From contig NW_019217794.1 of the NCBI RefSeq assembly GCF_002571385.2, positions 1,314,116 through 1,378,115 of the forward strand: 64,000 nucleotides of DNA, written 5' to 3'. The notes under the pieces are model-generated. The model searched no databases. It saw only the letters and a program-made list of their open reading frames with translations, and was not told the DNA's origin. The position numbers were made by a program, and so were the translations under genes. The stretch's first letter is position 1. Each line of letters starts with the position of its first letter. Source of the DNA: Stylophora pistillata (taxonomy: Eukaryota). Positions 2,417-60,088 of the stretch are shown here, one piece after another.

Positions 2417-2419
2417 AAA

Positions 2420-4057: not shown

Positions 4058-7000
4058 CTTGTGCAACTCGGTAAGTGGCATCAAATCCTTTAAAAGTGAT
4101 AATCTTGTCGGACTTGAAATTAATCGATATCTGTTCGCCATTTCCCAGGATGTATACTCGAGGCAGGAATGGAAAACCATGGTATTTTGTCATTCCGAAT
4201 CCATAACGGAATTTTTTCATCCAATCGTCGTCGTCATCATCGTCGTCATCGTCATCATCGTCATCGTCATCATCACAATCGTCATCCAAGAAATCGTCGT
4301 GTCTCCCTGTAAACCACGAATAAGCCCCGTATATGCCACTCAAACTACGTATCTCCCGAAAGCCACGGAGAATCTTGACGTGATCAAAACTACACAAAAG
4401 GGGAAAAAAAGCTTTACTAACAGTTATGAAACCAAGTTACATTACATACACAACGAAAGTATGAAATTCACATATCTGAAGTGCATTTATAGAAACGTAT
4501 TTGCACGATTCTCACAGTAAAGAGTACTATTCAAGAAATAGTGAAAATCGGACCTGAAAAAATTCAGGCCTGTAGCTCAATTGGTTGTACTAGTATCGCA
4601 GAGATCAGTGGTTCGAATCCCATACGGGCCTGAATTTTTTCAGGTCTGATTTTCATTATTACTTATATAGTGCTCTTTACTGCGAAGACCGTGCAAATAC
4701 GTTGCATTGCATAGTATATTATTTTCTTTTGTGCTTTTGAAATCAAGATAAAAGAGGAAAACTGACAATCGCGCCCATAAACTTGTGGAAGCTGGATACG
4801 AAATATCTGGAAAATTTTCAGTTAAACGTCTGGTTTAGCCAAGTTACTTTAAAACAGAACCATACGTATAAGATATAATTCAAAAGAAAAGGGAGATACG
4901 AGGATAGCGTTTTTTGCGTGCCCTTCCCAAGGTAAGTAAAGTTTACCTCTTTTATGAAAGTATTGAAATGATTAAGGTTTTCAAGATTTCTTTGTTTTGT
5001 ATGGTCTTAATAGTTCTATCATAGTTTGAGCAGTTCTCAATGTGACCCTAGGCTTTTATTTCCGAACCTCGAGCTGACACAGAAGCGTTTTGGGAAATAA
5101 TAAGGGCCACGTCATTTCACATGATTTGATGATTTCCATTTCCTCCTTTCACTACAACTTGATGAAGAACAATCAACTTACCACCGTTCTGTTTCAAAGG
5201 CGCGGAAATTCAAAACCAAAGTTGATCCAAGAGGAACAGTGATAGTCCATTTACATTCAACATTGTTCGGATAATTTGCTGGAAAACCGGGAGAAGTAAG
5301 GTTCCCGGATGGTGAAGCCAGAGGACCGCCACATAGGGCTAATAGAAAGAATAGATTGTTAAGGCAAGGAGATTTAGGAGATGGATTGTCAAGAGGTAAT
5401 AATTAAACCTCTACAACATAAGAATCAGATTACGTATTTGTCATACAATTCTTAAAACATTTCCTGAGCCGTTGACAAGGACAATTTGCCTAACAATCAA
5501 AAGCTTCTCTTCATCTTAATGTGTGATACAGGGGTATTATTTCTATTATTATCATCAACAAATGTCGTGATCAGTATTAAAATTACCAGCAGATATCAAC
5601 TTAGGATTGCTGTATCTTTATTGTTTTGGATGATCTCTTGATTGTATTGATGTATCATCACAGTTATTACCTTTCCCCATGGTGTAATGGGCAAAGAATC
5701 CTCTCCTTGTCACCCATGGATCGGATTTGAACACAATCCTCACGGGTTCCCCATTACCGTGAACGGAGACAACTTTTGCTTTTCTGTCTGCTCTCAGAGG
5801 CTCGGCAAACATGTAATTTCTCTTTCCATTCTTGTCATAGTTATCATCATCATCATCGTCATCATCATCGTCATCACACTCGTCGTCGTCGTTCTCATCA
5901 TTTCTATCCTTGAAATATTTGTTGTCATCAGATTCCCCTCCTTGAGTCAGACGACGGATCAGCCTTCTTCCCTGATAGACTTTCACCAAATCATAGCTGC
6001 AATAAATAAGAAATTATAATACTGAGGAGAACAATAATAATAACGATGGTGATGATATTGATAATGATGACGATGATGATAATTTTAATAACAATGGTAG
6101 CGATATTCATAACGCGAACAAATATGATATTGTTGGGATAACTATGAGAATAATAGTGGTTATGATGTTGATAATAACGATTATGATAATCAGAGCAATA
6201 ATAACGATAGTGGTATTCATAATCAGAACCAAAATGGTATTGTAAGGATAACTATGATCATAATAAGAATGGTGATGATATTGATAATGATGACGATGTT
6301 GATTTATAGTAATATTAATTGTAGTCATGTTAACAATGAGAACAAAAACTTATATTAGTTGTCGAGAGATTTTAAGTTATTTGGTTGTTTTCCACTTCCC
6401 TTGACATTGAATACTGTAAATCGCATCGACTCTAGTTGATTTTGTGGTTCGTGATTTTCTAGAGGAAGTTTTCGCAATTGAATGAGCAATCCAAAAGCAT
6501 TTCAAAACATCACGGGTGACAATGAATGCAAGAGCAGGCAATGTATAATTTTTTTAAATTACATCTTTTAAGTAACAAATCCACTTTCTGAAGCCGCTTT
6601 AAAAGCACTTTTCAACCGTTGAAAAAAATGCCTGTATATTTCACCTTTAAATCTATCATTTCATACCATATATGTGTCGAGAAAGGTTATGGTTTATACA
6701 CTAAGACTTCTTAATTACGTAAAAGAGCTTCAAATTTCAAAGGAGCACAATATTGGAATCCCTTCTGACGCTTTGCAAACTCGGTGTTAATGCAGAGAGG
6801 AAAAAGGAAGGCAGATAAAGAAAAGAAGGCATAAAAAGAAAAACTGAGGTCATAACCAAAACAGGTTTTGACTCACCAAGGCTCTGTTTCGAAGAAGAGA
6901 AAGTCAATCCTGAATTGTGAGCCCGAAGGTACCGTTACGGTCCACACACAATACGCGTTGCTGGGGTAGTTACCAGGGTAATTAGGAGATGCTAAGTTCC

Positions 7001-9179
7001 CGGATGGGCCGACTAAAGCACCACCGCACTGCCCTGGGGCCACTGAAAGAGTTCAAAGAAGAATTGAACGTTAATAAAAGGTAAAACATATTTATCTATT
7101 TAACGACAAAGCTACAAATTTCAAATATTCTTATTCTGTTTGATTACTCCTAATAAATGATTAATTTTTGATCAAGTTAGCCGGTTCCATCTTCATGCAG
7201 AAGACACAGGACACGTCACAATAAAACACAGTCTCATTGACCTATTATTTTCATCGTTTTCCTCTTTTGTCTTTTAATTCCCTTCTGTTTTAGGTCAACG
7301 GTCTTCTGCACCAAGTCATGAGCGAGTTAGCTTTGGTCGCGCACTTGCATGCTCCTCAGACATGAAAGGGATTTGTCAATGGTTAGCAAAGGAATGTAGA
7401 GGTATACACCAATTAACAGGGCCTCTGGCTTGAATCCATGTTAGGTCTATGCGCTTCTTTGAAAACCTCGCAGCTTATGTTAAGCTTTTATTCATCACTA
7501 GTAGAGAATGATTATTATGAAAAGCCGTTAACTGTATGGCTATTTTTAAAGTAAAATGCTTAGCGACATTTAAGCGATTCATAAAATAATTCCTCAGCTT
7601 CACCTGGTCGAGGAGGCGGTCTTGTGGTTGGACCAGGAAAAGGTAATGACTGTGTCACTATGATGTGCGCCAGCACAAACTACGGAAAAATAACAAGAGA
7701 AAATGATTACTGCTTCTCTACACTGTTTGCTAGGAGAAATATAATAAGTTACATTGTCTATTGTAATTATATGACTTTGTGTAAGCGTTTGTTTAGATAG
7801 TGTAACACCGCATTATTTCGCTCAGTATGACAATGTAAAATGTAAATAATATTCATTAGCCAAATATCGCTCTCTCATTTTATGATTTTTTTTTTTATGT
7901 GTTTCTATAAAAGTAAAACTGTTCTACTGGAAATCAATCCATTTTGTTTTCTTGGCGTTGTACATGATTTGTAACAATTTATTCAACTTTTCAATTTACA
8001 TAAGTAGATTGGCCAATCATCTTTGAATGTTATAGCATTTACTACAGTCAAACTGGGGAGCTAATATAGTGTTCTGATAGGTTTAAATAAGTCAGTCATT
8101 CTACTAAAAGTTTCAAACGATCAACCGTTCTCAAGCTGAGCTTAGTAGAGGAATATATCAATTAAAATGCCTAGAAAAGTTAACTCTAGTATCAGTAAGA
8201 ATTGAAGCTATTCAGAGAGACACGTCTTGAACTCGTAAGATTACAATGCTTGAAATTGAATAAACCTTAGACAAAAAAGCAAAGCTAAACAAAATCCAAA
8301 CTAAAACAAAAACTAAAGGGAATATCAAAGTAGCCTTTCTGCATAGAACCATCATTCGTTGTGCACTTTGGTGGAAAATGCATTTTGTAATTGTATCGGC
8401 AATTTCCTTTGAGGCTTGAAAATCGAGAATGTGATACTGAAGTAAGCATATACAAGCCATATTGCAATCGCTCGAATAAGTACCTGAAGTAATTGATAGA
8501 TAGCATAATTATGTGTTTTGTTACGGCAGTAATTTGCTCGCTCAGTAGAAACTTTTTTCTGGTTAATTATTATTATTTCTTTGATGGTAACAGGACAAAA
8601 ACTGAAATTGAGAGCTTCATGAAGGAAACGACATTGACTCTTGGCTCCTATGGCCTATAGCATAATAGATTTTCGCTATTGCATAAATAGCGCTATCTAC
8701 TGCGAGGATCGTGCATCATACGTATCTAATACCGCAGTTCAAAATACAAGAACTTCTTATATTCATTGTATCTCATTTATCACTTTCACGGGTTTATTAC
8801 GAATCAACTTAACGGCCTGCTCCCAGTTGGCTTGTTAGCTCAATTGGTAGAGCGCTGCACTAGTATCGCAGAGGTCAGTGGCTCGAGTCCCGTACAGGCC
8901 TGATTTTTTTCGGGTCTGATTTTCGCTATTGCATAAATAGCGCTATCTACTGCGAGGATCGTGCATCATACGTATAATAGCATTGGTAAGTCATCCTAAC
9001 TACTAGCCGGTTTACCTCTAGAGTAATGCTTCCTCTACCTTATCCATGACCTAGAGCTAATTGACCACTGAATTTACGGAAAATGCTTAAGATCAACACT
9101 TCCAAAGTCTCTTGAAAACAATCGGAAGAAAATGATATATTTTAAGGCTTACCGTCAATGCAGTTACAGGAACCTTCAT
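4058..9179 (-). CDS. Gene A: secreted two-CUB protein with Asp-rich loop insertions (terminal exon unresolved)
   Basis: Exons 9179-9153, 7679-7604, 7042-6877, 5996-5671, 5338-5182 and 4389-4058 have GT-AG borders and join in frame. Signal-like N-terminus MKVPVTALTFVLAHIIVTQS. CUB motifs CGG..SPNYPGNYP..CVW..F..E.C.D..FKSD...RGF.A.Y. Confidence 0.85.
4497..4701. mobile_element. tRNA-like repeat flanked by ~75-bp inverted repeats
   Basis: 4497-4573 is complementary to 4627-4701. The core has A-box (TAGCTCAATTGG) and B-box (GGTTCGAATCC) motifs. Absent from the mirror arm. Confidence 0.7.
6010..6335. repeat. Degenerate (GAT/AAT)n low-complexity tract in gene A intron 3
   Basis: Trinucleotide-periodic AT-rich tract visible directly. 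Confidence 0.8.
8668..8974 (+). mobile_element. tRNA-like repeat with ~57-bp direct terminal repeats and ATAATAG target duplication
   Basis: 8668-8724 equals 8918-8974. tRNA-like core TAGCTCAATTGGTAGAGC...GCTCGAGTCC. The empty site is seen at ~47658-47675. Confidence 0.8.
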
Positions 9180-9245
9180 CTTCGCTTGACAGCTTGCTAC
9201 GGTTCCTTCTTTACTCATTTCTCCGAAATGCTTGAGTTAACTGCG

Positions 9246-9252
9246 TTTTATA
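9246..9252 (-). promoter_or_regulatory. TATA box of gene A
   Basis: TATAAAA about 70 nt upstream of the ATG, conserved at 47387-47393. Confidence 0.6.
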
Positions 9253-12200
9253 TGCCCCACAGATCAATGATATGGTTCTCCAACTGGACAGAAATATGCG
9301 GTGTTTTCCTCCACTTAAAAATTCAAGTGCCGGTGTGGCCTTTGCGGATTCACCGTTCCGCTACAAATTAAAGATAGCTGTATTAATCCTTAAACTCTAA
9401 CCATGATTTAAAGGCAGACAGTGTGGCTACGTGGAGAAATGAGTTCATGGCCATTTGAACAACTTTATTGCTTTCTGTAATGTATCGAACCTTTTAAAAC
9501 TGTTGAAGTTCAGTTGGGGTTAGGGGGGAACCACTTTTGTTTACAAAGCCAATATTAATTGCCAAGTACTCGGAATGATTTGATCAACCGCAAACTTGAG
9601 GAATATCCTCTAGCTAAGCCCAATAACGTAAACGATGTCGGCATACAGTCTGTGATGTTTCCTGCAAAACCTAAACTATTTCGTAGTTAACTATATAGTT
9701 GAAGGGTGCAATGGATAGCTTGAATTGTTGTTAAAGAACTGTCGATCCATTTAACGGTTGAATATATTTAGCTGTCAAAGTGCAAAAACAAATGTACCTC
9801 TTTTGTTGTTTAATTAATGACATCATTCCCCTTAGACTGATGACGCAAACCTGGTTTTTTCATTATTTTTTTTATTCCTGTTCTCCGGCTGAGAAGCGAG
9901 TGTCTTTAAAGTGTTAAAAAATTAGATGAATCGAAAAGAGAATGGCCAATATCTTATGCTGCAGACGTAATGGGTAGACGTTGGTTAAAAGCAATATAAA
10001 TGATAAAACCTTTAAAAAAAGGATTATTTAACAAACAAACAAAGAGCGGAAGAAAATGGTTTGATGCGCCGGCTCCTCCTTAAGCCCCAAAAAACTAAGA
10101 TAACGTGTATCTTTAAATTTTGTTTACATTTGGAAATTTACGACAAAGGTCGGAAACATGATGCAAGCTATTCCTCAAATCAGTATGGCTCGAAGAGACA
10201 AATATCCAAGGATTTTATTGGCATCCTTTGGGACAGGTTATATTTTCAGACGCTATTTTTGGTCTTATCACGAATATCACCGGGGGACAATCGGTTTTTA
10301 CCTTATCGCAGCAGGAAAAGTATACGATACAGCTTCTGCATCGTAATTCTTGTTTTGAAAGAGTGTAAACAAAAGCATACCCAGTGCATGGTAATGGGAA
10401 AGGAAGTCCTTAAAATAAGAAACTGAAGAAGTGATAAACCACGAAAAATGTTGTTCCCCGGCATCCAGTCAAACGAGAGTTTTGTCGAGTGCATTTCAAG
10501 GGCAAAAATATTGGCACCGATTTATCGAACAGTGCCTCATTTGAAGATAATTCACGGGAAAAAATTAATCCTAAATAGTCAAACAAGATCCTCGTGGAGG
10601 TTTCAAATAAGTGAAGGTCTATTTGACTGTAGAATTCTGAGAAATTAATAGCCCAGCGCTGTTCTGTTCATTTTTCGGAAAGAAAAAATGATTTATCTAT
10701 TAATCAAACAGCTGTCTACGTGATTCATCTGATTAACGAATGATATTATGGTGAATTGATGAATAAATATTAATAAATATTGTGGATAAATATTAATAAA
10801 CGTGATTTAAGCTGTTAACTAGACTTTAAACTATCAGGAATAGTAAGAAAAGCCAATAATTATGGGTGATTAGATGGAAATATATTTGTGTCAGCTTGTA
10901 AGACGTCGTTCCAGTTTTTTTTTTTTAATCTTTTCTTAAGACTAATATTCTGGTCTTCTTCATCTGCAAGTCGTAATGAATCATTTTAAAAGATACTGAT
11001 TTTCCCGAAAGAGATTATTTCTGTAATGATGATAAATTGGAAGTTAAGAATTCAAACGAAGAAAAGTACGTCATCTATCTTGTGTTCCATTTTTAGAAGA
11101 TCTTACTACGTTGAGTCGTGACAGAGTTAATGAAATCCGATAGCCTATTAAGCTCTTGTCCAAAATCTAGCCAAGACAAGTTAAGATTAAACTATCATTA
11201 ATGATATGAAATATCTGCCGGATCACAGAAGATAGAACTGTCTATTGCTAAATTTCAGTTCATAAAGTAAAACCTATCAGTTACTTTCAGATGCATAGTC
11301 AAATTATGTTATGACAATCAGAAAAAATAGCCTTGCTAGAACTTTTGCAGACCGAAGCAGTCGAAATACCATAGCAGATCCAGTAGCTAAGAGGATATTG
11401 CAATCAGCAGGCCTCGAACTTTAATTCATTGTAATGAAACGTCACTTTCCTTTCACTCTGACCACATTTTAAGTCCAGATTGTTTAAACTGATTTATATT
11501 GGTTGATCATATCACCTAAAATATGAAGCAACTACGCACATTTGAAACTGAATATTTCATTATTGATGTATGAGCCCTGTATGGAAACTTTTATCTTTCT
11601 CTTCAAAATGGTGTGCTTTCAAACTCTTGATGAAATCAGTCGACAGAAAGGCTAGACAACCGTTGACTGTTTCTAGTTAAGGAGGTTAAAGGGGGCTTTG
11701 AATGGAGAAACACTATTTACTGTCTACAATGATGCAAATGCCTTCTAAGAGCAATACATAGAATTTCCGCAACTTCTGCAGGCCAAAAATAATATATATT
11801 TGTTATTTATCGTAAGAGTGACAGGAGAATAGGTCGACCAGGAGTTGTTCTTGGTACAAGAAGATGGGAAAAAAAAGAAAAGTAACAACAAAAAAGCGAT
11901 TAAAATAACAAACAAACCGAGAAGCAAATTCTTCAAATGAACAGTTTAACAGATATCTGAATTTTTATCTCCGACGCTTGCTCTACCCATTAGTTCAATG
12001 AATATTTTGCACATTTTGTTTATCGATCTTAAGGTCATTTACCGGACTTTATTGTGGTGTGAAAGCGCTTTTCAAGACAGCCGAGGAATTCTCAGATTTA
12101 AAAAGAACTATTCAGAAAGTCGAAGAAAGAAAACTGTTTGTTTATAAGGCGTGTTATTAATATCAACCGGGTCCAACCCGGGGTGATTCATTTTCATTGT

Positions 12201-15692: not shown

Positions 15693-15728
<36 letters not shown>

Positions 15729-20147: not shown

Positions 20148-20174
20148 CTGAAGAACATCCTGCTTGTCCTAATG
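20148..20174 (+). pseudogene. Orphan copy of gene C exon 1 with ATG>CTG
   Basis: CTG AAG AAC ATC CTG CTT GTC CTA ATG|gtaagg versus ATG AAG AGC ATT CTA CTT GCC CTA ATG|gtaagg at 36229-36203; no downstream exons in this arm. Confidence 0.72.
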
Positions 20175-47386: not shown

Positions 47387-47393
47387 TATAAAA
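47387..47393 (+). promoter_or_regulatory. TATA box of gene A'
   Basis: TATAAAA upstream of ATG 47455, conserved with gene A. Confidence 0.6.
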
Positions 47394-47454
47394 CGCAGTT
47401 AACTGAAGCATTTCGGAGAGTAAAGAAGGAACCGTAGCAAGTTGTCAAGCGAAC

Positions 47455-50400: not shown

Positions 50401-53400
50401 AAATCCATTCAAGCCAGAGGCCCTGTTAATTGGTGTAGACCTCTACATTCCTATGCTAACCATTGACAAATCCCTTTCATGGCTGAGAAGCATACGAATG
50501 CGGGACCAAAGCTAACTCGCTCATGACTTAGTGTAGATGACACAGTTGGCGTAAAACAAAAGGGCATTAAAAGACAAAAGAGCAAAACAATGAAAATAAT
50601 AGGTCAACGAGGCTCTGTTTTATTGTGATGTGTCCTCTGTCTTCTGCATGAAGATGGAACCGGCTAACTTAATCAAAACTGATCATTTATTAGGAGTAAT
50701 CAAACAGAATCAGAAAACTTGAAATTTTTAGCTTTGTGGTTCAATAGATAAATATGTTTTACCTTTTATTAACGTTCAATTATTGTTTTAACTCTTTCAG
50801 TGGCACCAGGGCAATGTGGTGGTGCTTTAGTCGGCCCATCCGGGAACTTAGCATCTCCTAATTACCCTGGAAACTACCCCAGCAATGCGTATTGTGTGTG
50901 GACCGTAACAGTACCTCCGGGCTCACAATTCAGGATTGACTTTCTCTTCATCGAAACAGAACCTTGGTGAGTCAAAACCTGTTTTGGTTATGGTCTATGT
51001 TTTTATTTTTGCGCCTTCTTTTCTTTATCAGCCTTCTTTTTTCGTCTCTGCATTAACACCGAGTTTGCAAAGCGTGAGAAGGGATTCCAGTATGATGCTC
51101 CGTTTAAATTTGAAGCTATTTTATGCAATTCAGAAGTTTTAGTGTATAAACCATATCATTTCCCGACGCAGATATGGTGTGAGATGATAGATTTAAAAGT
51201 GAATTATACAGGCATTTTTTCAACGGTTGAAAAGTGCTATCAGTAATCTGCAGACAGAACTTAGAAAGTGGCTTCAGAAAGTGTATTTGTTACTTAAAAC
51301 CGTAATTAAAAAATTAAACATTGCTTGCTCTTGCAATCATTGTCACCCGTGATGTTTTGAAATACTTTTGAATTGCTCATTCAATTGCGAAAACTTCCTC
51401 CAGAAAATCACGATCCGCAAAATAAACCAGAGTTGATGCGCTAAAAAGTACCCAATGTCAAGGGAAGTGGAAAACAACCAAATAACTTAAAATCTCTCGA
51501 CAACTAATATAAGTTTTTGTTCTCATTGTTAACATGACTACAATTAATATTACTATAAATCAACATCGTCATCATTATCAATATCATCACCATTCTTATT
51601 ATGATCATAGTTATCCTTACAATACCATTTTGGTTCTGATTATGAATACCACTATCGTTATTATTGCTCTGATTATCATAATCGTTATTATCAACATCAT
51701 AACCACTATTATTCTCATAGTTATCCCAACAATATCATATTTGTTCGCGTTATGAATATCGCTACCATTGTTATTAAAATTATCATCATCGTCATCATTA
51801 TCAATATCATCACCANNNNNNNNNNNNNNNNNNNNNNNNNNNNNNNNNNNNNNNNNNNNNNNNNNNNNNNNNNNNNNNNNNNNNNNNNNNNNNNNNNNNN
51901 NNNNNNNCTTATTAACCAAGCGTGAGGGCCGTACTGGGAGAATATCAGCCCGAGGTCTTGACAGTATGGACCGAGCACAGCGAGCTCCATACAGAAAAGA
52001 CCGAGGGCCAATATTCTTCCAGTACGGTCCCGAGCAAGCTTGGTTAATAAGAGAATTATTGTACGACTGAAGTTCAAAGGGACACAAGTGCGGTATCATT
52101 CGGAACCATTCGGGACAGTGCCCAGTCCAATACTGAGAAAATATTGACCAGCAATAGAGCATTTTGATTAGTTAACCGCCTCCCGGTTAGCTCAATTGGA
52201 TAGAGCGCTGGACTGTTGTGCGGGAGGTCGAGGGTTCGAGCCCCGGCCGGACCAACACTCAGGGTCTTAAAAATAATTGAGAAGAATTTGCTACCTTTCT
52301 ATAACATCAAGAAATGGTTAGATATTCTAGTCTTCTCGGATAGGGACGAATAAATGGAGGTCCCGTCTCCTGCAGGGTTGGGGTAGGAGACGTTAATTTC
52401 CCACACACGAGATTACTGTGTGATGGATGTCCTCCCCTGGGGTGGGATGGGTGGGATATAGGGCGCACTTAATAAGGAGCCTCGCTCTGTTGTGCGACCC
52501 TCACCACACTCTGGTGAAAGTGAGTAAATTAAATTAAATTAAATATCATAACCATTATCATTATCATCATGATAGTTATCCCAACAATACCATATTTGTT
52601 CTAATTATGAATATCGTTACCATTTTTATTAAATTGTCATCATCGTCGTCATTATCAATATCATCACCATCGTTATTATTATTGTTCTCCTCAGTATTAT
52701 AATTTCTTATTTATTGCAGCTATGATTTGGTGAAAGTCTATCAGGGAAGAAGGCTGATCCGTCGTCTGACTCACGGAGGGGAATCTAATGACAAAAAATA
52801 TTTCAAGAATAAAAATGATGAGAACGACGACGACGAGTGTGATGACGATGATGAGGACCAAAAGGATGATAATGATGACGATGAAAAAAATGGAAAGAGA
52901 AAATACACGTTTGCCGAGCCTCTGAGAGCAGACAGTAAAGCAAAAGTTGTCTCCGTTCATGGTAATGGGGAACCCGTGAGGATTGTGTTCAAATCCGATC
53001 CATGGGTGACAAGGAGAGGATTCTTTGCCCATTACACCATGGGGAAAGGTAATAACTGTGATGATACATTAATACAATCAAGAGATAATCCAATACAATA
53101 AAGATACAGCAATCCTAAATTGATATCTGCTGGTAATTTTAAAACTGATCACGACATTTGTTGATAATACGTGAGAAATAACACTCCTGTATCACACATT
53201 ATGATGACGAGAAGCCTTTGATTGTTAAGCAAATTCTCCTCGTCTACAGCTCAGGAAATGTATTGAGAACTGTATGAAAAATATGTAATTTGACTTTTTT
53301 ATGTTGTAGAGGTTTAATTATTACCTCTTGACAATCCATCTCCTAAATCTCCTTGACTTAACAATCTATTCTCTCTTTTAGCCCTATGTGCTGGTCCTCT

Positions 53401-54414
53401 GGCTTCACCATCCGGGAACTTTACTTCGCCAGGTTTTCCAGCAAATTATCCGAACAATGTTGAATGTAAATGGACTATCACTGTTCCTCTTGGATCAACT
53501 TTGGTTTTCAATTTCCGCGCCTTTGAAACAGAACGGTGGTAAGTTCACTGTTCTTCAGCAAGTTGTAGTGATAGGAGGAAATGGAAATCATCAAATCATG
53601 TGAAGTGACATGGCCTTTAATATGTCCCAAAACGTATGCTTTTGTATCAGCTCGAGGTTTGGAAATAAAAGCCTTGTGTCACATTGAGAACTGCTCAAAC
53701 TATGATAGAACTATTAAGACCATATAAAGAAAAAAATCCTGAAAACATCCTGAAAACCTTAATCGTTTCAATACTTCCATAAAAGAGATAAACTTTACTT
53801 ACCTCGGGAATAACACGGAAATAATCTATCCTCGTATCTCTCTTTTCTTTTGAAATATATCTTATACGCAGGGTTCTGTTTCAGAGTAACTTGGCTAAAC
53901 AGGACGCTTAATTCAAGTTTTCTAGATATTTTGTATCCAGCTTCTACACGTTTATGAGCGAGATCGTAGATTTTCCTCTTTTATATAAATTTCAAAAGCA
54001 CAAAAGAGAATAACGTACAAAGTTGTGAAACAAAGTAATGCAACTTTGTTTCACAACTGTTAGTAAAAGCTTTTTTTCCCTTTTTTTTTTGTAGTTTTGA
54101 TCACGTCAAGATTCTCCGTGGCTTTCGGGAGATACGTAGTTTGAGTGGCATATACGGGGCTTATTCGTGGTTCACAGGGAGACACGACGATTTCTTAGAT
54201 GACGATTGTGATGATGACGACGATGATGATGACGATGACGACGACGATTGGATGAAAAAATTTCGTCATGGATTCGGGATGACAAAAATTCATGGTTTTC
54301 CATTCCTGCCTCGAGTATTCATCCTGGGAAATGGTGAACACATATCGACTAATTTCAAGTCCGACAAGATTATCACCTTTAAAGGATTTGATGCCACTTA
54401 CAAAGTTGTACGAG
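47455..54414 (+). CDS. Gene A': inverted paralog of gene A (terminal exon unresolved)
   Basis: Exons 47455-47481, 50163-50238, 50801-50966, 52720-53048, 53382-53538 and 54095-54414 join in frame; N-terminus MKALVTALAFVLAYIIVTQS. Confidence 0.85.
49450..50085 (-). mobile_element. Penelope-like element 3' remnant (GIY-YIG C-terminus, inverted terminal copy, degenerate hammerhead)
   Basis: Peptide SKPVARHFNLPGHS...RKNLEQKLIFQTGSLNPTGINERFSF. 49687-49770 is mirrored at 49999-50083. Hammerhead-like motif at ~49568-49601. Confidence 0.8.
51908..52172. mobile_element. Second copy of the 28266-28580 hairpin repeat
   Basis: Reverse-complement match to 28305-28572. Confidence 0.75.
52176..52544 (+). 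mobile_element. tRNA-derived SINE with (TAAAT)n tail
   Basis: TAGCTCAATTGG A box, GGTTCGAGCC B box, shared body. Confidence 0.85.
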
Positions 54415-54504
54415 GTAACTTGCTTTTTGTTCATGATATTCTCTAGGTGAGAAGAAACTCTTACACAAAATGGCAGATCTGAAAAAATGGCTGAAATAAC
54501 TTAG

Positions 54505-54758
54505 TTTATTTTTCAATTTATTAGATTCGCCGACAGGCAGGGACACCGCGACAGCTTGCGCCAATTACTGCGGGTCCAGTAAACCCACCCATCCCACCCC
54601 AGGGGAGGACATCCACCACACAGTAATCTCGTGCGTGGGAAATTAACGTCTCCTACTCCTACCCCTGTAAGAGACGGGCCTACGGTTTTATTCGTCCTTA
54701 TCCAGAAAGACTAGAATATCTTTCTATTTCTTGATGTTATAGGAAGGTAGCAAATTCC

Positions 54759-54793
<35 letters not shown>

Positions 54794-54863
54794 CCGGGGC
54801 TTGAACCCTCGACCTCTAGCACAACAGTCCGGCGCTCTACCAATTGAGCTAACCAGGAGGCGG
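54505..54863 (-). mobile_element. tRNA-derived SINE
   Basis: Reverse complement of the same head and body; absent from the mirror arm near 3965. Confidence 0.85.
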
Positions 54864-55638
54864 AGGCTTATGGAGGGAAGGAGGGTGGTGAGCTTCGATT
54901 TCCGGTACTTTTTTTATTCATCATAAAAGGGTTAAAAAAAAAAGATTGGCAAATATCTTATTTTAGCTTCTCATATGGAAAGATTGTTATTCACTCAATT
55001 TTCTTTTCTTGTCCCTATATTCATGTGTTAATCTTTGGACATTACCTGAGAAAAGTCTACGGAGTCATTTAGCTTTATAGCCAATCTTTTATAAGTGTGT
55101 TCGTATTATGGCATGTCGCTCTTCCAGCAAATTTTTTTCAAGGTCATTGATATACTCATTCATAAAGAAAAGCTTATCAATGAGTATTGAACAATTTTCA
55201 TTGCTTCAAGACGCACGGTAAACAACTTTTTTACTGATTAATTAGCGTGATCATCCAAACCATGGCCATGAATCGAAAAGCTGGTCCGTCACTCGCCATC
55301 AACTCGTGACTTAAAGAGCTTTTCAGTTTTTCTCTCAAATCCCAGACAATCAGAATATGTATATATTTCTAAAGGAGCCGATCCTTTTGTTAAAGAATTG
55401 GCTCTAATCAATCACAGAAAGCGTAACATCACATTGTTTATTCCACAAACGTAAACTTGGCTAATACGTTTTCTTTTCAGGTCCAGTAAAAGGAAAGTGA
55501 TGAGTGATGACTACAGAATGAACNNNNNNNNNNNNNNNNNNNNNNNNNNNNNNNNNNNNNNNNNNNNNNNNNNNNNNNNNNNNNNNNNNNNNNNNNNNNN
55601 NNNNNNNNNNNNNNNNNNNNNNNNNNNNNNNNNNNNNN

Positions 55639-55808
55639 AAACCCACCCATCCCACCCCAGGGGAGGACATCCACCACACAGTAATCTCGTGCGTGGGAAA
55701 TTAATCCTACCCCTACCCCTGTAAGAGACGGGCCTACGGTTTTATTCGTCCTTATCCAGGAAGACTAGAATATCTTTCTATTTCTTGATGTTATAGAAAG
55801 GTAGCAAA

Positions 55809-55839
<31 letters not shown>

Positions 55840-55917
55840 CGGTCCGGCCGGGGCTTGAACCCTCGACCTCCCGCACAACAGTCCGGCGCTCTAACAATTG
55901 AGCTAACCAGGAGGCGG
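55639..55917 (-). mobile_element. tRNA-derived SINE inside a probably redundant assembled block
   Basis: 55639-56576 repeats 54581-55523 across an N gap. Confidence 0.7.
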
Positions 55918-58316
55918 AGGCTTATGGAGGGAAGGAGGGTGGTGAGCTTCGATTTCCGGTACTTCTTTTTTTCATCATAAAAGGGGTGAAAAAAAAGACT
56001 GGCAAATATTTTATTTTAGCTTCTCATATGGAAAGATTGTTTTTCACCCAATTTTCTTTTTTTGTCCCTATATTCATGTGTTAATCTTTGGACATTACCT
56101 GAGAAAAGTCTACTGAGTCATTTAGCTTTATAGCCAATCTTTTATAAGTGTGTTCGTATTAAGGCATGTTGCTCTTCCAGCAAATTTTTTTAAAGGTCAT
56201 TGATATACTCATTTATAAAGAAAAGCTTATCAATGAGTATTGAACAATTTTCATCGCTTCAAGACGCACGGTAAATAACTTTTTTATTGATTAATTAGCG
56301 TGATCATCCAAACCATGGCCATGAATCGAAAGGCTGGTCCGTCACTCGCCATCAACTCGTGACTTAAAGAGCTTTTCAGTTTTTCTCTCAAATCCCAGAC
56401 AATTAGAATATGTATATATTTTTAAAGGAGCCGATCCTTTTGTTAAAGAATTGGCTCTAATCAATCACAGAAAGCGTAACATCACATTGTTTATTCCACA
56501 AACGTAAACTTGGCTAATACGTTTTCTTTTCAGGTCCAGTAAAAGGAAAGTGATGAGTGATGACTACAGAATGAACGCTTTTGAAAAATCACGCGATAAC
56601 ATTTCCTTCGATGTTTACCTCTCTGCCCTTGATGTCCTTTATCACACGCTGTTATTAGACACGTTTCTCTTTAATTATTCCTGATGATAACTGCCAAGAT
56701 TTTCCATTGTTGTAGTTTGAAAAATGTACGTTGAAATGATGAGAAGAAAAAATTTTATCCATTTTTTTGCATGTGGGGTTCACAAAACGCACGTGCGGGA
56801 TTTATTGTCACAGTTTTCAATCTGAAAATAGAAGCTCCTCCTCTTGTTAAGATTAGTGTGGAAAAAATGGCATATTAGAGATGTATCCTGCTGTGATTTG
56901 AAACTCAAATGAGGTTGATAAGAAGGCAATACATAACGCTGCGGATGAGAAATCATTATGTAAATCAACGACATCCTTGATGAATCGTGTGTTGCCAAGA
57001 TTGACAAGGGCGATTCACACTGGATTAGAAGCCATCGACTATTTCTGAGAGGAAATTTCTCACATATTGCCAGATACAAACTTGCAATCTGTAATTCAGC
57101 CTGGTTTTTCTGCATGTATCATATTCTTGAGTTCGAAGACATCTCTTCAACGATCAAATAGCCCTGTATGAGGAGATACAGTGAACAGTGAAAGCCGCAG
57201 CCGAAGAAATAAGAACAAACGAGTTAAGAGGGCATGCGAGGCGTTTCATGGTATGGATTCTGATATTCTCAAAGTAAAATTACAGTACCCATTATCTTGC
57301 TATTTTTATGTAATTTATTCTAGGATTTGGAAATTTAAATTTGACTACCAAAACTATCAAAATTTAGTTAAATCTGTCGGCGACAATGCTCTCAATTTAT
57401 TCTATTTTTGAGCCTTCAATGGGACAAATGGTAATGTAATTATTAATCACACACAATAATTTTGCAGTGATATCACTGGCTGAAAGCCTCAGGGAGAATA
57501 TGGACTTTAACCCCACAGCCCCCCTCTCCCCTCTTAAAGTGTTCAAAACTTTTACATGTACCATGTTTCATTTCGCATCAATGAACCAGTTACTTTTGCA
57601 AATCACATTCTGTTTATTCTTCTAGAGAATCATACAAAGGTTAATACATGTATAAGCAAATCTCAGCACGAGTTACAGTACCACTTGCCGTCCACCAGAA
57701 TGAAAAGGTTAGACCTCGTTACAAATTATCAGAAAAAGGTAAGGAAAAAACTCTAGCTGGAATCATCAACGATCGTCTCCCCTGTAGCGTTCTGAAAATT
57801 GATACAACGGATTAGAGTTAGTAAATACCTGATAAGCGTAGCTTGGTTCCACAAGATCAAAATTGTTGTCGCGTACTTTTTATATACTGAGAGGTTCAGG
57901 AGCCGAGGATTCGAGTTATTATCATCATTTTCTTTTATGATCAAGTAAGTATTGTCGAGGTAAGGGGCGAGAATGGAGGGGGTAGTTTTGTTGAATAGAA
58001 CCTTACGGGCTTAAACTCCATCGAGCCACCCAGCTCCCGCTTCCATGGTTTTCCCATGGTTTTCAGTGATATGTGTAGATACAGTGAAAGTGGTAGACTA
58101 AAAGTTAAGCAAAGGCTAAGATTAGAAATGAATACCATGTGTATCACTCAAAGGTCTATCAATTCATCGATAAATTAAACGAAATAAACCTAGAACTCTC
58201 ACGTTTGGATCGGTCATTGAACAAGGTGCTGCTACTTACAGCACATGATTCTACACGGAATGTTTTTTTCGGCGAAAGGGTTTAAAACTGGTCGTTTACG
58301 AAAAAATACCACTCAC

Positions 58317-60088
58317 TTCTATTCTGGACCCTGATTTCAAATCCTTTCTCCTGGCCATCATTGCCATCGGAAGTAAACGTGGCAATTATGGGTTCATTGC
58401 TTTGCGATCCACAAATGAATTCATATCTGTATTTCGTTTTTCTTCCCCTTGGATAGATGGATGAGAAATACTCGTCATAGATTTCTTCCAAGTCATTTGA
58501 GTCGTTATTTTCAAATCCAAACGGAAAAAAACCATGAAGAGAATTGGGTCCAGCAACTTCATCATCATCATCATCATCATCATCATCGTCGTCGTCGTCG
58601 TCGTCACCGCCCCTCAACTTACAACCATATCTGGACCTCTTAAGTTCAGAATCACTAGTTATGCTCAAAAGTTCTTGCCCCCCTTGCTCGAAAGTTAAGG
58701 TATCCCTGCAAAAGAATGATAATTTATAAATAAACTAACGTTTTTATAAAACCCTGTTTAGTACTCGACTTATGTAAGTTTTTCAAACAAAATTTTTCAT
58801 TATGGACAACATATTTTTCATCTCCACTGCGTCAACAGAAAAACAGTCATTAGAACTAAAAATACGAATGGTTGATTATTGTTTCATGAAACACCAGCCA
58901 TCGGTCAACGGGCGTAAATTCATACTGTTGGTTGTGATAAAAAAGTTTAAAAAAGTAGTAATTACAATAATAAAAGTGTACACAAACGCACAAAAAGCTT
59001 ACCCTTGTCCAAGTTCGAATGACTCCTTAATTTCAAATTTTAGTCTAAGATAACGGTCTTCTGCGAGAGAACCAAGATCCCACGTTCTGGTAGTACTAGG
59101 TGGATAGCTGCCAGGGAAACCAGGCGATCTAAGTTTTACAGTTTTGCCTGTAAATAAACATATATAGAAGTATTAAATTGTAAGATTTTTCCATTGTCCA
59201 TGATGTTTTAACACAAATGCTAATCAGTGGCTCCAAAACTGAAAAGGTGACATCATCAATCTATGCAAATGACTCAAGGTAAATGAGTTAACTGACCCCC
59301 CGGTGACGATGTTTCCATTGATTATTCTAGAAATAGCGCTTTCAAGGACATTTTGAAAGCATAAGAAAGTCAAATACATTATATAATCTCACCATCTGCG
59401 CAAATTTGTATGTTGCCGTGTAGATCCTCGTGTTATCTAGGTATACTTTAAAGTAAATTTTCAGAAAACAGACACTTTTTTTGTGAAGTTACTCTCTCTA
59501 TTTGGTTTCTCTTATGGAAATTAATATCTCATTTCTAAAAGTAAAGTAAACCGCGCGTTTGCCTGCTGATATACGTCCTGCGTTACGTAAAAGCTTAACT
59601 TAGAAATTTTAATCACCTGGGTTAATTGTGATCATTGTCGGTGCGGGTGTCGTAGGTGCTGCGGTGGTCGTCGGTGCTTCGGTGGTCGTTGGTGCCTCGG
59701 TGGTCGTTGGTGCCTCGGTGGTCGTTGGTGCCTCTGTGGTGGTTGGTGCCTCTGTGGTGGTTGGTTCCTCGGTAGTGGTCGGCCCTTCGGTGACTGTCGT
59801 CGGCGCAACTTCGGCATTGCATAAGGTGGTATTGCAACATTCCAACGAACAAGACGTTAGGTTTCCTCCAGCGGATTCGTTACGCGAATTGCATAAGGAG
59901 TCGCTACTGCAAAGTAAATCCGGTAAACAGAACTTAAGAAGGCCTGGCTGATTGGCATTATCAACTGTCCGTATAGTCATACAGGCAAATTCTGCTTTAC
60001 AGTCGTCCACCTTTTCATTGGAACAATCATCTACGCAAGTGGTGCACATTAATTCGGACTCAATTTCTGTTATGCATATCAACAGCAC
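58317..60088 (-). CDS. Gene D: Ly6/uPAR domain, (TTTEAP)n stalk and one divergent Asp-loop CUB (first and last exons unresolved)
   Basis: Exons 60088-59617, 59147-59003 and 58705-58317 join in frame; LMCTTC...CCNTTLCN; RSPGFPGSYPP...FTSDGNDGQEKGFEI. Confidence 0.8.
59640..59785 (-). repeat. Coding 18-bp tandem repeat (PTTTEA)n
   Basis: GGTGCCTCGGTGGTCGTT-type units on the plus strand. Confidence 0.9.

What the first reader, a model, noticed from the sequence alone, without database searches (positions are those of the whole stretch)
4058..60088. Cluster of six secreted acidic-loop CUB genes: a candidate biomineralisation module
Seen: six spliced models with 11 CUB domains. Ten carry a long Asp-rich insert at the same site, between the strand ending RRL(S/T)G (divergent in D) and the G(T/N)GE...F.(S/A)D...GF strands. 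Established: CUB domains are compact extracellular beta-sandwiches, and Asp-rich secreted proteins are typical of coral skeletal matrix. From memory, the layout resembles the CUB-domain and threonine-rich skeletal matrix proteins reported for Acropora millepora; this needs a search to confirm. Inference: a folded scaffold that displays poly-Asp Ca2+/mineral-binding loops, diversified by local duplication. The split domains would likely be under-annotated.
Basis: partly seen in the sequence, partly recalled or inferred. Interest (0 to 1): 0.92.

Follow-up and report, generated by a model that had tools for sequence, protein, structure and literature searches.

The report
Coral skeletal CUB proteins with Asp-rich loops
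The window holds a real cluster of stony-coral (Stylophora pistillata) genes for secreted CUB-domain proteins with long aspartate-rich loops. The family is already published as a coral skeleton matrix component, so the finding is correct but not new.

Summary
There are six gene models with 11 CUB domains. Each domain is split by a phase-2 intron, and ten carry a 43-108 residue Asp-rich insert at the same loop.

The window is Stylophora pistillata scaffold LSMT01000011.1. [quoted passage not shown] Gene B' is XP_022799127.1 ("tolloid-like protein 2").

The genes belong to the scleractinian "CUB domain-containing protein / threonine-rich protein" skeletal matrix family, found in Acropora skeletons in 2013 and 2016. 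A 2026 preprint already names XP_022799127.1 as an overlooked acidic two-beta-sandwich skeletal protein, alongside Desmophyllum SAARP12.

AlphaFold2 plus Foldseek give confident tandem CUB folds, with the insert as a disordered loop.

- A/A' and B/B' are the arms of a ~19.5-kb inverted duplication (dS 0.08-0.13, dN/dS 0.17-0.31).
- B' has an in-frame stop.
- The insert has an acidic part followed by a basic part.
- In the nine A/B/C-type inserts the single Cys sits where canonical CUB Cys4 lies, which would tether the loop beside the conserved Glu-Asp-Asp Ca2+ triad.
- The type C protein is basic overall.
- Short terminal exons of A and C lie beyond assembly gaps.

All gaps are intronic or intergenic. 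The mineral-binding mechanism remains an inference. Interest is modest.

The parts
796..20352 (.). Left arm of the inverted duplication (holds genes A and B)
   Evidence: Self-blastn gives collinear reverse matches to 57820-36037 at 80-95% identity.
36037..57820 (.). Right arm of the inverted duplication (holds genes B' and A')
   Evidence: Exon dS is 0.08-0.13 and dN/dS 0.17-0.31 against the left arm.
2178..9179 (-). Gene A (type A: signal peptide, short Pro/Thr linker, two CUBs with inserts, 5-aa tail). Its last intron spans gap 3390-3864.
   Evidence: Exons at 9153-9179, 7604-7679, 6877-7042, 5671-5996, 5182-5338, 4058-4389 and 2178-2197. The orthologue P0174 (Pocillopora XP_027053451.1) is 88-98% identical over its four CUB-half exons.
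5771..5941 (-). Asp-rich insert of CUB A_a (57 aa)
   Evidence: 42% D+E, net charge -14, one Cys.
4158..4334 (-). Asp-rich insert of CUB A_b (59 aa, D-run of 17)
13304..19267 (+). Gene B (type B: signal peptide, Ly6/uPAR, Thr/Pro linker, two CUBs with inserts, tail AAFHG). The intron inside CUB-b spans gap 17634-18322.
   Evidence: Exons at 13304-13333, 13501-13594, 14027-14437, 14796-14952, 15848-16131, 16774-16930, 18333-18733 and 19248-19267. The GenBank model there is 517 aa and ends at 19267. The orthologue is P0236.
14027..14437 (+). Ly6/uPAR three-finger domain plus Thr/Pro-rich linker exon of B
   Evidence: Pfam UPAR_LY6 scores 25.7 bits against a cutoff of 24.8.
15903..16031 (+). Asp-rich insert of CUB B_a (43 aa)
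   Evidence: 51% D+E.
18388..18630 (+). Asp-rich then basic insert of CUB B_b (81 aa)
   Evidence: The exon starts 10 nt after the gap and has an intact AG acceptor.
27989..33543 (-). Gene C (type C: Ly6/uPAR, Thr/Pro linker, CUB without insert, CUB with the longest insert, tail AHSGR). Its last intron spans gap 28805-29547. The signal-peptide exon was not found.
   Evidence: Exons at 33451-33543 (tentative), 32687-33046, 32013-32169, 31459-31637, 30653-30812, 30045-30523 and 27989-28005. It corresponds to XP_022799866.1 (P0172): 98-99% identical over the Ly6 and first N-half exons, 82-85% in gapped tblastn spans over the rest.
31459..31637 (-). C-half of the only CUB without an insert (C_a). 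It lacks both Cys3 and Cys4.
   Evidence: Pfam CUB E 2.5e-6 over profile 54-110. The split codon AG|A encodes Arg.
30145..30468 (-). Insert of CUB C_b (108 aa: acidic block, then an Arg-rich block)
   Evidence: 29 Asp and 19 Arg. pLDDT is below 50 across P0172 residues 319-419.
37110..43154 (-). Gene B' (inverted copy of B) with an in-frame TAA at 40562-40564 in the N-half of its first CUB
   Evidence: Exons at 43125-43154, 41827-41920, 40994-41383, 40473-40629, 39356-39639, 38311-38467, 37510-37910 and 37110-37129. RefSeq XP_022799127.1 (P0179) starts at the Met after the stop and is exact on three exons.
39456..39584 (-). Asp-rich insert of CUB B'_a (43 aa)
37613..37855 (-). Insert of CUB B'_b (81 aa)
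47455..55500 (+). Gene A' (inverted copy of A). Intron 1 spans gap 49878-49998 and the intron inside CUB-a spans gap 51816-51907. Its stop codon lies 24 nt before gap 55524-55638.
   Evidence: Exons at 47455-47481, 50163-50238, 50801-50966, 52720-53048, 53382-53538, 54095-54414 and 55481-55500. The GenBank model of 394 aa starts at 47455.
52775..52948 (+). Asp-rich insert of CUB A'_a (58 aa)
   Evidence: Most A/A' amino-acid changes fall here (dN/dS 1.84 for this exon).
54150..54314 (+). Asp-rich insert of CUB A'_b (55 aa, D-run of 13 against 17 in A_b)
58317..60088 (-). Gene D (divergent: Ly6-like domain, APTTTE x7 linker, one degenerate CUB with insert). First and last exons were not found, and the 5' end of the Ly6 exon is uncertain.
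   Evidence: Exons at 59617-60088, 59003-59147 and 58317-58705. The N-half matches the family profile at 94% HHalign probability. The 18-bp repeat x6.9 is.
58420..58653 (-). Insert of D's CUB (78 aa, D-run of 15), bracketed by two Cys

Best explanation
The locus is a paralogous cluster of scleractinian skeletal organic matrix protein genes in Stylophora pistillata. They belong to the family known as 'CUB domain-containing protein', 'threonine-rich protein' and, in a 2026 preprint, SAARP12-like.

**Architecture**
- Each product is a small secreted protein. A signal peptide was shown for A, A', B and B'. None has a membrane or GPI tail; the C-terminal tails are only 5-6 residues.
- The protein has one or two Ca2+-type CUB beta-sandwiches. 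In types B, C and D these follow an N-terminal Ly6/uPAR three-finger domain and a mucin-like Thr/Pro linker.
- In ten of the eleven CUBs, the loop that normally carries Cys4 has expanded into a 43-108 residue disordered segment. It starts with a poly-Asp block and usually ends with a Lys/Arg/aromatic block.

**Inferred mechanism**
- Cys3 lies two residues before the Asp of the C-x-D motif, one of the canonical Glu-Asp-Asp Ca2+ ligands. The only Cys of each A/B/C-type insert sits inside the poly-Asp block.
- I infer that the Cys3-Cys4 disulfide staples the acidic loop next to the domain's Ca2+ site.
- The folded CUB would then serve as an anchor, for Ca2+ and possibly for a basic partner. It would present a flexible, high-capacity, low-affinity Asp array that binds Ca2+, amorphous precursor or aragonite surfaces in the calcifying space, so the protein becomes occluded in the skeleton.

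**Shown versus inferred**
- Shown here: gene structure, domain identity, fold, disorder of the loop, family membership, duplication history.
- Taken from the literature: presence in the skeleton and expression of orthologues in calicoblasts.
- Inferred only: the disulfide tether, Ca2+ or mineral binding by the loop, and any effect on crystal growth.
For: **Identity of the locus**
- The window is 100% identical to GCA_002571385.2 LSMT01000011.1.
- P0172 (XP_022799866.1) and P0179 (XP_022799127.1) match gene C and gene B' exons at 98-100% on the best-matching exons.

**CUB identity**
- Pfam CUB scores 140, 118 and 119 bits on P0172, P0236 and P0174.
- Nine N-half exons match at E 1e-11 to 1e-13.
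- phmmer against PDB finds cubilin, PCPE-1, neuropilin and MASP.

**Fold**
- AlphaFold2 gives the CUB cores pLDDT 74-91 and the inserts below 50, in both P0172 and P0236.
- Foldseek against PDB puts tandem-CUB PCPE-1, neuropilin, cubilin and MASP at E 1e-17 to 1e-13.

**Conserved residues**
- The Glu of x-T-E, the Asp of C-x-D, the Asp of F-x-S/A-D and the single Cys in the insert are invariant or nearly so across 22 coral sequences. They are also present in the window domains.
- The one domain without an insert also lacks Cys3 and Cys4, in S. pistillata, Oculina and Orbicella alike.

**Family and distribution**
- A profile search of 1.84 billion representatives returned only 238 hits. Thirty-three of the best 150 were fetched because one stretch of the protein matched most of the profile; nearly all of them carry an Asp-rich block before the last CUB strands.
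- Every named family member is scleractinian: Stylophora, Pocillopora, Acropora, Montipora, Orbicella, Oculina, Desmophyllum.

**Transcript support**
- Logan contigs of 1.9-2.9 kb encode 502-508 aa orthologues with the same junctions.

**Skeleton and calicoblast evidence from papers**
-.

**Selection**
- Purifying selection acts on both duplicate pairs.
Against: - No experiment or computation here shows Ca2+ or mineral binding by the loops.
- Presence in a skeletal proteome can reflect passive occlusion.
- The type C protein is basic overall (pI 9.3-9.5). Its loop carries 19 Arg, so 'acidic protein' does not describe the whole cluster.
- The peptides behind XP_022799127.1 could come from B rather than B', which has a stop codon. 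I could not tie XP_022799089.1 (Peled 2020) to a gene in this window.
- Signal peptides for C and D were not found.
- The disulfide tether is inferred from alignment only; model coordinates could not be inspected.
- Unnamed ENA and Logan homologues could not be assigned to taxa, so restriction to Scleractinia is likely but not proven.
Confidence: 0.7

Rival explanations
1. The proteins are matrix organisers, not mineral binders. Ca2+-type CUB domains normally use their Glu-Asp-Asp/Ca2+ site to clamp a Lys or Arg of a protein partner, as PCPE-1 does with procollagen, MASP with collagen-like stalks, and cubilin with intrinsic factor. Here the CUBs would dock collagens or other matrix proteins. 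The acidic/basic loop would act as a solubility tag, a spacer, or an intramolecular pseudo-ligand whose basic block occupies the site. The protein would end up in the skeleton only because the matrix is entombed.
For: - The closest structures are tandem-CUB PCPE-1 and other ligand-binding CUBs.
- The triad is conserved.
- Each acidic block is followed by a basic block.
- Type C is basic overall.
- Cross-linking work places a 'CUB domain-containing tolloid-like protein' in a protein network within S. pistillata matrix (PMC8086859).
Against: - D-runs of up to 17 residues are retained across Complexa and Robusta. They are typical of proteins that bind Ca2+ or carbonate mineral.
- The insert-free CUB shows that the fold does not need the loop, so the loop is an added function.
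- No partner is known.
Confidence: 0.2
2. The cluster encodes signalling or recognition factors. The N-terminal Ly6/uPAR three-finger domain, which also resembles activin-receptor and BAMBI ectodomains, binds a ligand such as a BMP/activin-type factor or a receptor on calicoblasts. The CUB part would be accessory.
For: - Pfam UPAR_LY6 scores just above its cutoff for B and B'. Activin_recp and BAMBI match weakly in B, B', C and D.
- The three-finger domain is modelled with pLDDT 62-85.
Against: - Type A genes lack the domain altogether, yet keep the loops.
- The Pfam matches are marginal.
- Nothing here links the domain to a ligand.
- This reading does not explain the Asp loops or the presence in skeleton.
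Confidence: 0.05
3. Part of the picture is an assembly artefact. The two 'arms' would be mis-joined haplotypes or redundant scaffolding around gaps, so the real genome would have three or four genes, not six. The stop codon in B' would be a sequencing error.
For: - There are six gaps of 92-743 N plus two single N.
- Near-identical tandem duplicates flank two of these: 25897-26292 versus 26294-26686, and 54581-55523 versus 55639-56576.
- Dispersed-repeat copies abut several gaps.
Against: - The arms differ by 5-20% in DNA and by dS 0.08-0.13 in exons. They also differ by repeat insertions and by indels in the D-runs. That is far more than expected between alleles.
- Orientation and order are consistent over ~19.5 kb.
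- Pocillopora and Acropora also carry A-type and B-type genes on one contig, although this does not test the inverted copy.
Confidence: 0.05

Closest known systems
Acropora skeletal organic matrix proteins 'CUB domain-containing protein' and 'threonine-rich protein' (Ramos-Silva 2013, PMC3748352; A. digitifera CUB dcp-1 and -2, Takeuchi 2016, PMC4890752)
   Same: - They are homologous. Cluster P0175 matches the window's Ly6 exons of B, B', C and D at 42-46% and CUB C-half exons at 41-54%.
- They have the same order of parts: signal peptide, Cys-rich N-domain, Thr-rich linker, CUBs.
- RefSeq names genes of this window after them.
   Different: - The papers describe a single CUB and 'no other known domains'. 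Here the architecture is a Ly6/uPAR domain plus two CUBs whose second halves are hidden by the insert.
- The S. pistillata cluster also has Ly6-less type A genes, an insert-free CUB (type C) and a degenerate member (D).
[quoted passage not shown]
   Same: - XP_022799127.1 is the RefSeq product of gene B' in this window.
- The preprint already reports two beta-sandwiches, a putative Ca2+ site on each, disordered D/E-rich segments and a skeletal origin.
   Different: - In the section I read, the preprint does not place the acidic segment inside the CUB fold at the Cys4 loop.
- It does not mention the Ly6 domain, because the RefSeq model is truncated by the stop codon.
- It does not describe the gene cluster or the inverted duplication.
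- It says no tandem arrangement exists in the PDB. Foldseek here finds tandem-CUB PCPE-1, neuropilin and cubilin.
Coral acid-rich proteins CARP4/SAARP1, CARP5/SAARP2 and acidic SOMP
   Same: They are secreted, skeleton-occluded, have poly-Asp stretches next to a beta-sandwich core, and are proposed to bind Ca2+.
   Different: - No sequence relationship appeared in any search here.
- In the CUB family the acidic stretch is a loop inside a domain, closed by the fold and probably by a disulfide. It is not a terminal or inter-domain region.
- Whole-protein D+E is 11-22%, below the 35% used for 'highly acidic' proteins.
Ca2+-binding CUB domains of PCPE-1, MASP/C1r/C1s, cubilin, neuropilin and TSG-6
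   Same: The same fold, with the Glu, Asp, Asp positions and the aromatic residue of the P-x-Y-P motif conserved.
   Different: None of these has a long low-complexity insert at the Cys4 loop. They bind protein ligands, and none is linked to mineral.

Membership tests
CUB domain (Pfam PF00431) | Profile match above the gathering score | tested here: met
   - Nine N-half exons score 43-52 bits against a cutoff of 21.4.
- The insert-free C-half scores 28.2 bits.
- Whole RefSeq proteins P0172, P0236 and P0174 score 118-140 bits.
- Insert-bearing C-halves alone reach only E ~0.1.
- D's N-half fails Pfam but matches the family profile.
CUB domain (Pfam PF00431) | Beta-sandwich fold | tested here: met
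   AlphaFold2 cores have pLDDT 74-91. Foldseek hits PCPE-1, neuropilin, cubilin, MASP and C1r CUB2, with TMt 0.76 for a single domain. This was tested on database orthologues and RefSeq products, not on joined window exons.
CUB domain (Pfam PF00431) | Four conserved cysteines (Cys1-Cys2, Cys3-Cys4) | tested here: inconclusive
   - All four are present in nine domains, with Cys4 embedded in the insert.
- C_a lacks Cys3 and Cys4.
- D lacks Cys1 to Cys3.
- Disulfide pairing was not determined.
Ca2+-binding CUB subtype | Glu / Asp / Asp ligands at the F-x-x-E, C-x-D and F-x-S-D positions | tested here: met
   The residues are invariant or nearly so in alignments A2, A3 and A4 and in the window exons. 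This holds at sequence level only; Ca2+ binding itself is not testable with these tools.
Scleractinian CUB-dcp / threonine-rich SOMP family | Sequence homology to the Acropora SOMPs | tested here: met
   [quoted passage not shown] It aligns to the window's Ly6 exons of B, B', C and D and to its CUB-half exons.
Scleractinian CUB-dcp / threonine-rich SOMP family | Thr-rich linker after the N-terminal Cys-rich domain | tested here: met
   Present in B, B', C and D. A and A' have only a short Pro/Thr stretch and no Ly6 domain.
Scleractinian CUB-dcp / threonine-rich SOMP family | Protein recovered from cleaned skeleton | not testable with these tools
   Literature only. XP_022799127.1 is cited as an S. 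pistillata skeletal protein. [quoted passage not shown]
Scleractinian CUB-dcp / threonine-rich SOMP family | Expression in calicoblasts | not tested
   Reported for orthologues under the same names in a stony-coral single-cell study (PMC12019164). Not checked for these S. pistillata loci.
Ly6/uPAR three-finger domain (PF00021) | Profile match and a Cys pattern ending CC-x4-CN | tested here: met
   - B scores 25.7 bits and B' 25.2 bits against a cutoff of 24.8.
- C and D match only the related Activin_recp and BAMBI models, below cutoff.
- CC-x4-CN is present in all four.
- The domain is modelled with pLDDT 62-85.
Tolloid / BMP-1 metalloproteinases (RefSeq name of B') | Astacin protease domain | tested here: not met
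   P0179 carries only PF00431, and no protease domain appears in any exon or orthologue. The name is a best-hit artefact of the CUB domains.
DMBT1 (GenBank name of the fused B'+C model) | SRCR domains | tested here: not met
   No SRCR match in P0228's record or in any orthologue.
CARP/SAARP highly acidic proteins | More than 35% Asp+Glu over the protein, and homology to CARP4/SAARP1 | tested here: not met
   Whole-protein D+E is 10-22%. No CARP or SAARP-named protein appeared in the homologue searches whose hits carry names. Only the inserts reach 27-53% D+E.

The most novel reading that the evidence does not exclude
The insert may be a distinct, scleractinian-specific device and not merely an acidic tail.
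- It would be a disulfide-stapled acid-then-base loop grafted onto the Cys4 loop, beside the Ca2+ site of a ligand-binding CUB.
- In type B proteins it may be cut by a proprotein convertase at the conserved dibasic motif where the acidic block ends. Cutting would free a poly-Asp arm that stays tethered through Cys3-Cys4.
- This would turn an ordinary protein-recognition domain into a mineral or precursor handle. The paired acidic and basic blocks could drive coacervate-like condensation of Ca2+-rich phases.
Probability: 0.25. Interest if true: 0.6.

Novelty: already known. Interest (0 to 1): 0.33.

Why it matters
Coral skeleton formation depends on secreted matrix proteins, and Asp-rich ones are the main candidates for controlling CaCO3 nucleation. 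This cluster shows how one such set arose. An ordinary Ca2+-type CUB domain acquired a long charged loop, and the genes multiplied locally, including a recent inverted duplication.

The family and its place in the skeleton are already published, so the value here is a cleaner anatomy:
- a correct domain map (three-finger domain plus split CUBs);
- the exact insertion site and its likely disulfide tether;
- a natural insert-free control domain in gene C;
- a warning that RefSeq names (tolloid-like 2, DMBT1-like) and the truncated B' model mislead proteomic and comparative work.

Tried and rejected
- **Pfam on insert-bearing C-half exons alone.** It gave only E ~0.1 CUB hits plus spurious low-complexity hits, so I relied on N-halves, whole database proteins and fold.
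- **Finding the S. pistillata full-length gene B protein and XP_022799089.1.** Homologue searches with P0236 and P0179 did not return them. An exact look-up of P0172 was not on record.
- **Searching for signal-peptide exons of C and D and for D's terminal exon.** Motif searches found nothing convincing. The candidate 'MPRTLLLMLVL' at 63760-63792 ends in a stop with no donor site.
- **Testing the ~280-bp dispersed repeat as a tRNA-derived SINE.** ARAGORN found no tRNA.
- **Allelic or haplotig origin of the arms.** Rejected on divergence.
- **Tolloid and DMBT1 identities.** Rejected because the defining domains are absent.
- **Left out by rule.** Exons were searched one by one by reference, and natural database proteins (P0172, P0179, P0236, P0174) stood in for the spliced products. 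D therefore could not be folded. No gap letters were looked up or filled; L002 is the same record with the same N runs.

Full report
**Source and layout**

The window is 37% G+C. It has six N runs of 92-743 N (3390-3864, 17634-18322, 28805-29547, 49878-49998, 51816-51907, 55524-55638) and two single N. It is 100% identical, N runs included, to Stylophora pistillata GCA_002571385.2, scaffold LSMT01000011.1 (1,552,712 bp), at about 1.32-1.38 Mb.

A self-comparison shows a large inverted duplication. Positions 796-20352 match 57820-36037 in reverse, collinearly, at 80-95% identity, around a unique centre of about 15.7 kb.
- A (-) and B (+) lie on the left arm.
- C (-) lies in the centre.
- B' (-) and A' (+) lie on the right arm.
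- D (-) lies just outside the right arm.

**The observation**

Ten stop-free segments encode the second half of a CUB domain, broken by an Asp-rich stretch. The first halves sit in separate upstream exons.

- Of the ten N-halves scanned, nine match Pfam CUB at E 1e-11 to 1e-13 over profile positions 1-50. B'_a was not scanned because of its stop. It equals B_a at all 50 compared codons.
- D's N-half fails Pfam but matches a profile of the other nine at 94% probability, E 8.5e-8.
- The eleventh CUB, the first of gene C, has an ordinary C-half (E 2.5e-6, profile 54-110) with no insert.
- All 22 half-domain exons have AG/GT boundaries. The outer boundaries are phase 1 and the inner intron is phase 2. 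In nine domains the split codon TG|Y makes CUB Cys3; it is AG|A (Arg) in C_a and GG|G (Gly) in D.
- The inserts are 43-108 residues long, 27-53% Asp+Glu, with net charge -8 to -18 and D-runs up to 17. As delimited, each holds one Cys.
- They are not uniformly acidic. An acidic block is usually followed by a Lys/Arg/aromatic block, most strongly in C_b, which has 29 Asp and 19 Arg.
- The Asp tracts are mixed GAT/GAC codons, not pure microsatellites. They differ in length between duplicates: 17 Asp in A_b against 13 in A'_b.

**Gaps**

No gap interrupts an exon.

| Gap | Position relative to genes | Evidence on continuity |
|---|---|---|
| 17634-18322 | Inside the intron of CUB-b of B; the next exon starts 10 nt after it with an intact acceptor | Both flanks align in order to the uninterrupted 403-nt intron of B'. 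About 88 nt of B' have no counterpart |
| 51816-51907 | In the matching intron of A'_a, next to a 110-bp tandem repeat and a dispersed-repeat copy | Collinear with the A arm |
| 49878-49998 | In intron 1 of A' | Not separately assessed |
| 55524-55638 | 24 nt after the A' stop codon | Flanked by a 96.5% tandem duplicate that repeats the terminal micro-exon |
| 28805-29547 | In the last intron of C | No paralogue to check against; continuity unproven |
| 3390-3864 | In the last intron of A | Continuity unproven |

The terminal micro-exons of C and A are at 27989-28005 and 2178-2197. The CUB domains are unaffected by these two gaps. Frames depend on splice phase, not on gap length. I looked up no gap letters.

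**Full gene models**

I found small exons with orthologues as guides, working exon by exon.

- Exon 1 encodes MKVPVTALT in A, MKALVTALA in A' and M(M)KSFLLALT in B and B'. Exon 2 completes a plausible signal peptide.
- B, B', C and D have one exon that encodes a Ly6/uPAR three-finger domain plus a Thr/Pro-rich linker. Pfam UPAR_LY6 is just above its cutoff for B and B'. C and D hit only related clan models. The CC-x4-CN ending is present in all four.
- D's linker is an 18-bp repeat x6.9, encoding APTTTE.
- Genes A, A', B, B' and C end in a 5-6 residue micro-exon, so none of them has a membrane or GPI anchor. D's terminal exon was not found.
- Signal-peptide exons for C and D were not found either.

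**B' and selection on the duplicates**

B' carries TAA where B has TAT (Tyr) in the first CUB, at 40562-40564. RefSeq's XP_022799127.1 starts at the next Met and so lacks the signal peptide, the Ly6 domain and half a CUB. GenBank's PFX33522.1 fuses B' with C.

Summed over exons without joining them, dN/dS is 0.31 for A/A' (dS 0.13) and 0.17 for B/B' (dS 0.08). Both copies have therefore been under constraint, and they are too different to be alleles. The A_a C-half has dN/dS 1.84, with changes concentrated in the insert.

**Relatives**

A profile of the ten C-half exons, searched against 1.84 billion representatives, found only 238 proteins at E<=1e-3.
- I fetched 33 of the best 150, chosen because one stretch of the protein matched most of the profile. 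Nearly all of them carry an Asp-rich block before the last CUB strands.
- Most of the remaining listed hits are long multi-CUB proteins that match only the last strands.

Every named homologue is scleractinian:
- Stylophora: XP_022799866.1, which is gene C, and XP_022799127.1/135.1, which is gene B'.
- Pocillopora: XP_027053451.1 is type A, 88-98% identical to the four CUB-half exons of A. XP_027053432.1 is type B.
- Also Acropora, Montipora, Orbicella, Oculina and Desmophyllum.

Other points on relatives:
- The Acropora type B cluster carries the RefSeq names 'CUB domain-containing protein-like' and 'threonine-rich protein-like'.
- Orthologous transcript-sized contigs of 1.9-2.9 kb, encoding 502-508 aa, show the same exon junctions.
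- The alignment of 22 coral proteins separates types A, B and C. Both complex and robust corals are represented in the aligned set.
- Unnamed ENA and Logan members could not be placed taxonomically.

**Fold**

Instead I folded the RefSeq product of gene C (P0172) and the Pocillopora type B orthologue (P0236), using the family alignment.

| Protein | Region | Residues | pLDDT |
|---|---|---|---|
| P0172 | Three-finger domain | 13-103 | 68-85 |
| P0172 | Linker | 104-130 | disordered |
| P0172 | CUB1 | 131-242 | 74-90 |
| P0172 | CUB2 | 247-318 plus 420-458 | 78-91 |
| P0172 | Insert | 319-419 | below 50 |
| P0236 | Both CUB cores | - | 74-90 |
| P0236 | Both inserts | 248-288 and 399-463 | disordered |

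Foldseek against the PDB puts tandem-CUB PCPE-1, neuropilin a1a2, cubilin and MASP/C1r/C1s first, at E 1e-17 to 1e-13. Sequence search of the PDB agrees. The refuting outcome 'no CUB fold once the insert is removed' did not occur.

**Mechanism**

The following rests on established knowledge of Ca2+-binding CUB domains. The Glu of F-x-x-E, the Asp of C-x-D and the Asp of F-x-S-D coordinate Ca2+ and form a site that clamps a basic residue of a ligand.

- All three residues are kept in the window's domains and in the family.
- The canonical fourth Cys lies in the loop after the D-G strand. In the nine A/B/C-type domains it sits inside the poly-Asp block.
- Cys3 is two residues from the Asp ligand.
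- The one insert-free domain has lost both Cys3 and Cys4, in three genera.

I therefore infer a Cys3-Cys4 staple that holds the acidic loop next to the Ca2+ site. D is different: it lacks Cys1 to Cys3, and two Cys bracket its insert.

That the loop binds Ca2+, precursor phases or aragonite is plausible from its composition and from the family's presence in skeleton. It is not shown here.

**What is already published**

- Ramos-Silva 2013 and Takeuchi 2016 found the Acropora proteins in skeleton. They described one CUB, a Thr-rich stretch 'absent in other animal genomes' and no other domains.
- Conci 2019 found the Thr-rich protein only in some scleractinian families.
[quoted passage not shown] I could not map it to a gene here.
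- Mummadisetti 2021 reports a CUB-containing 'tolloid-like' protein in the matrix network.
- The 2026 preprint 10.64898/2026.03.24.713908 names Desmophyllum SAARP12. It states that S. pistillata XP_022799127.1 has the same two-beta-sandwich topology with Ca2+ sites and disordered D/E regions.
- A single-cell study places 'threonine-rich protein' and 'CUB domain-containing protein' in early calicoblasts.

**Verdict**

The observation and most of the interpretation hold, but the finding is already known in substance. New detail from this work:
- the true domain map and the precise insertion site, with its likely tether;
- the acid-then-base design of the loop;
- the basic overall charge of type C (pI 9.3-9.5 against 4.3-4.9 for types A and B);
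- the inverted duplication and the stop in B';
- the misleading database names.

Noticed in passing
796-20352 versus 36037-57820: A ~19.5-kb inverted duplication with a ~15.7-kb unique spacer holding gene C. The arms are 80-95% identical and differ by repeat insertions.
   Followed up: yes
40562-40564 (-): An in-frame TAA in gene B' where gene B has TAT (Tyr, 14861-14863). RefSeq's 'tolloid-like protein 2' model starts at the next Met. The rest of B' is still under purifying selection.
   Followed up: partly
17079-17357, 28306-28572, 29548-29728, 52174-52456, 54583-54863, 55641-55917: Copies of a ~280-bp dispersed repeat at 86-94% identity, most of them touching an assembly gap. ARAGORN finds no tRNA in them.
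   Followed up: partly
25897-26292 versus 26294-26686; 54581-55523 versus 55639-56576: Two near-identical tandem duplicates (97% and 96.5%) that flank a single N and a 115-N gap. The second repeats the terminal micro-exon of A'. They look like assembly redundancy but could be real.
   Followed up: no
Second-CUB loops: 18388-18630 (+) and 37613-37855 (-); orthologues P0236, P0268, P0180, P0009, P0151, P0247: A conserved dibasic or R-x-K/R-R motif sits exactly where the acidic block ends: PRKR-F here, RSKR-F, RVKR-M, KRRRR-F and RLRR-K in orthologues. It is a possible proprotein-convertase site inside the loop.
   Followed up: partly
Terminal micro-exons 2178-2197 (-), 55481-55500 (+), 19248-19267 (+), 37110-37129 (-), 27989-28005 (-): The family's C-terminal tails end in Gly-Lys, Gly-Arg or Gly (PGKGK, PVKGK, AAFHG, AHSGR; orthologues end GHMYGK, GGLFGK, GHYGR). 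This resembles a C-terminal amidation signal.
   Followed up: no
Gene C, 27989-33543 (-); P0172, P0005, P0171: Type C proteins are basic overall (pI 9.3-9.5) despite the D-run, because the loop also carries a long Arg-rich block. Types A and B have pI 4.3-4.9.
   Followed up: partly
23045-23737 (-): A 231-aa open frame with hydrophobic stretches in the unique centre. It has no Pfam match.
   Followed up: partly
10218-10409 (-) and 46295-46447 (+): A short Cys-rich open frame kept in both arms between the A-type and B-type genes. It has no significant Pfam match.
   Followed up: partly
1-112; 6036-6288 and 51569-51815; 59649-59773: Tandem repeats: a 12-bp unit x9.3 at the window start; a 110-bp AT-rich unit in the intron before the A_a and A'_a C-half exons (the A' copy ends at gap 51816); and an 18-bp unit x6.9 that encodes APTTTE in D's linker.
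   Followed up: no
L001 (ENA ERZ25067557, contig of 1.66 Mb), gene at 6001-6627: A more distant family member (P0091) with a much longer Asp/Asn/Glu/Tyr-rich then Arg/Trp-rich insert, flanked by reverse-transcriptase ORFs. The organism is unknown. In the cluster look-ups, relatives of three different member types (P0294, P0169, P0170) list the same longest-contig length, 1,102,051 bp.
   Followed up: partly
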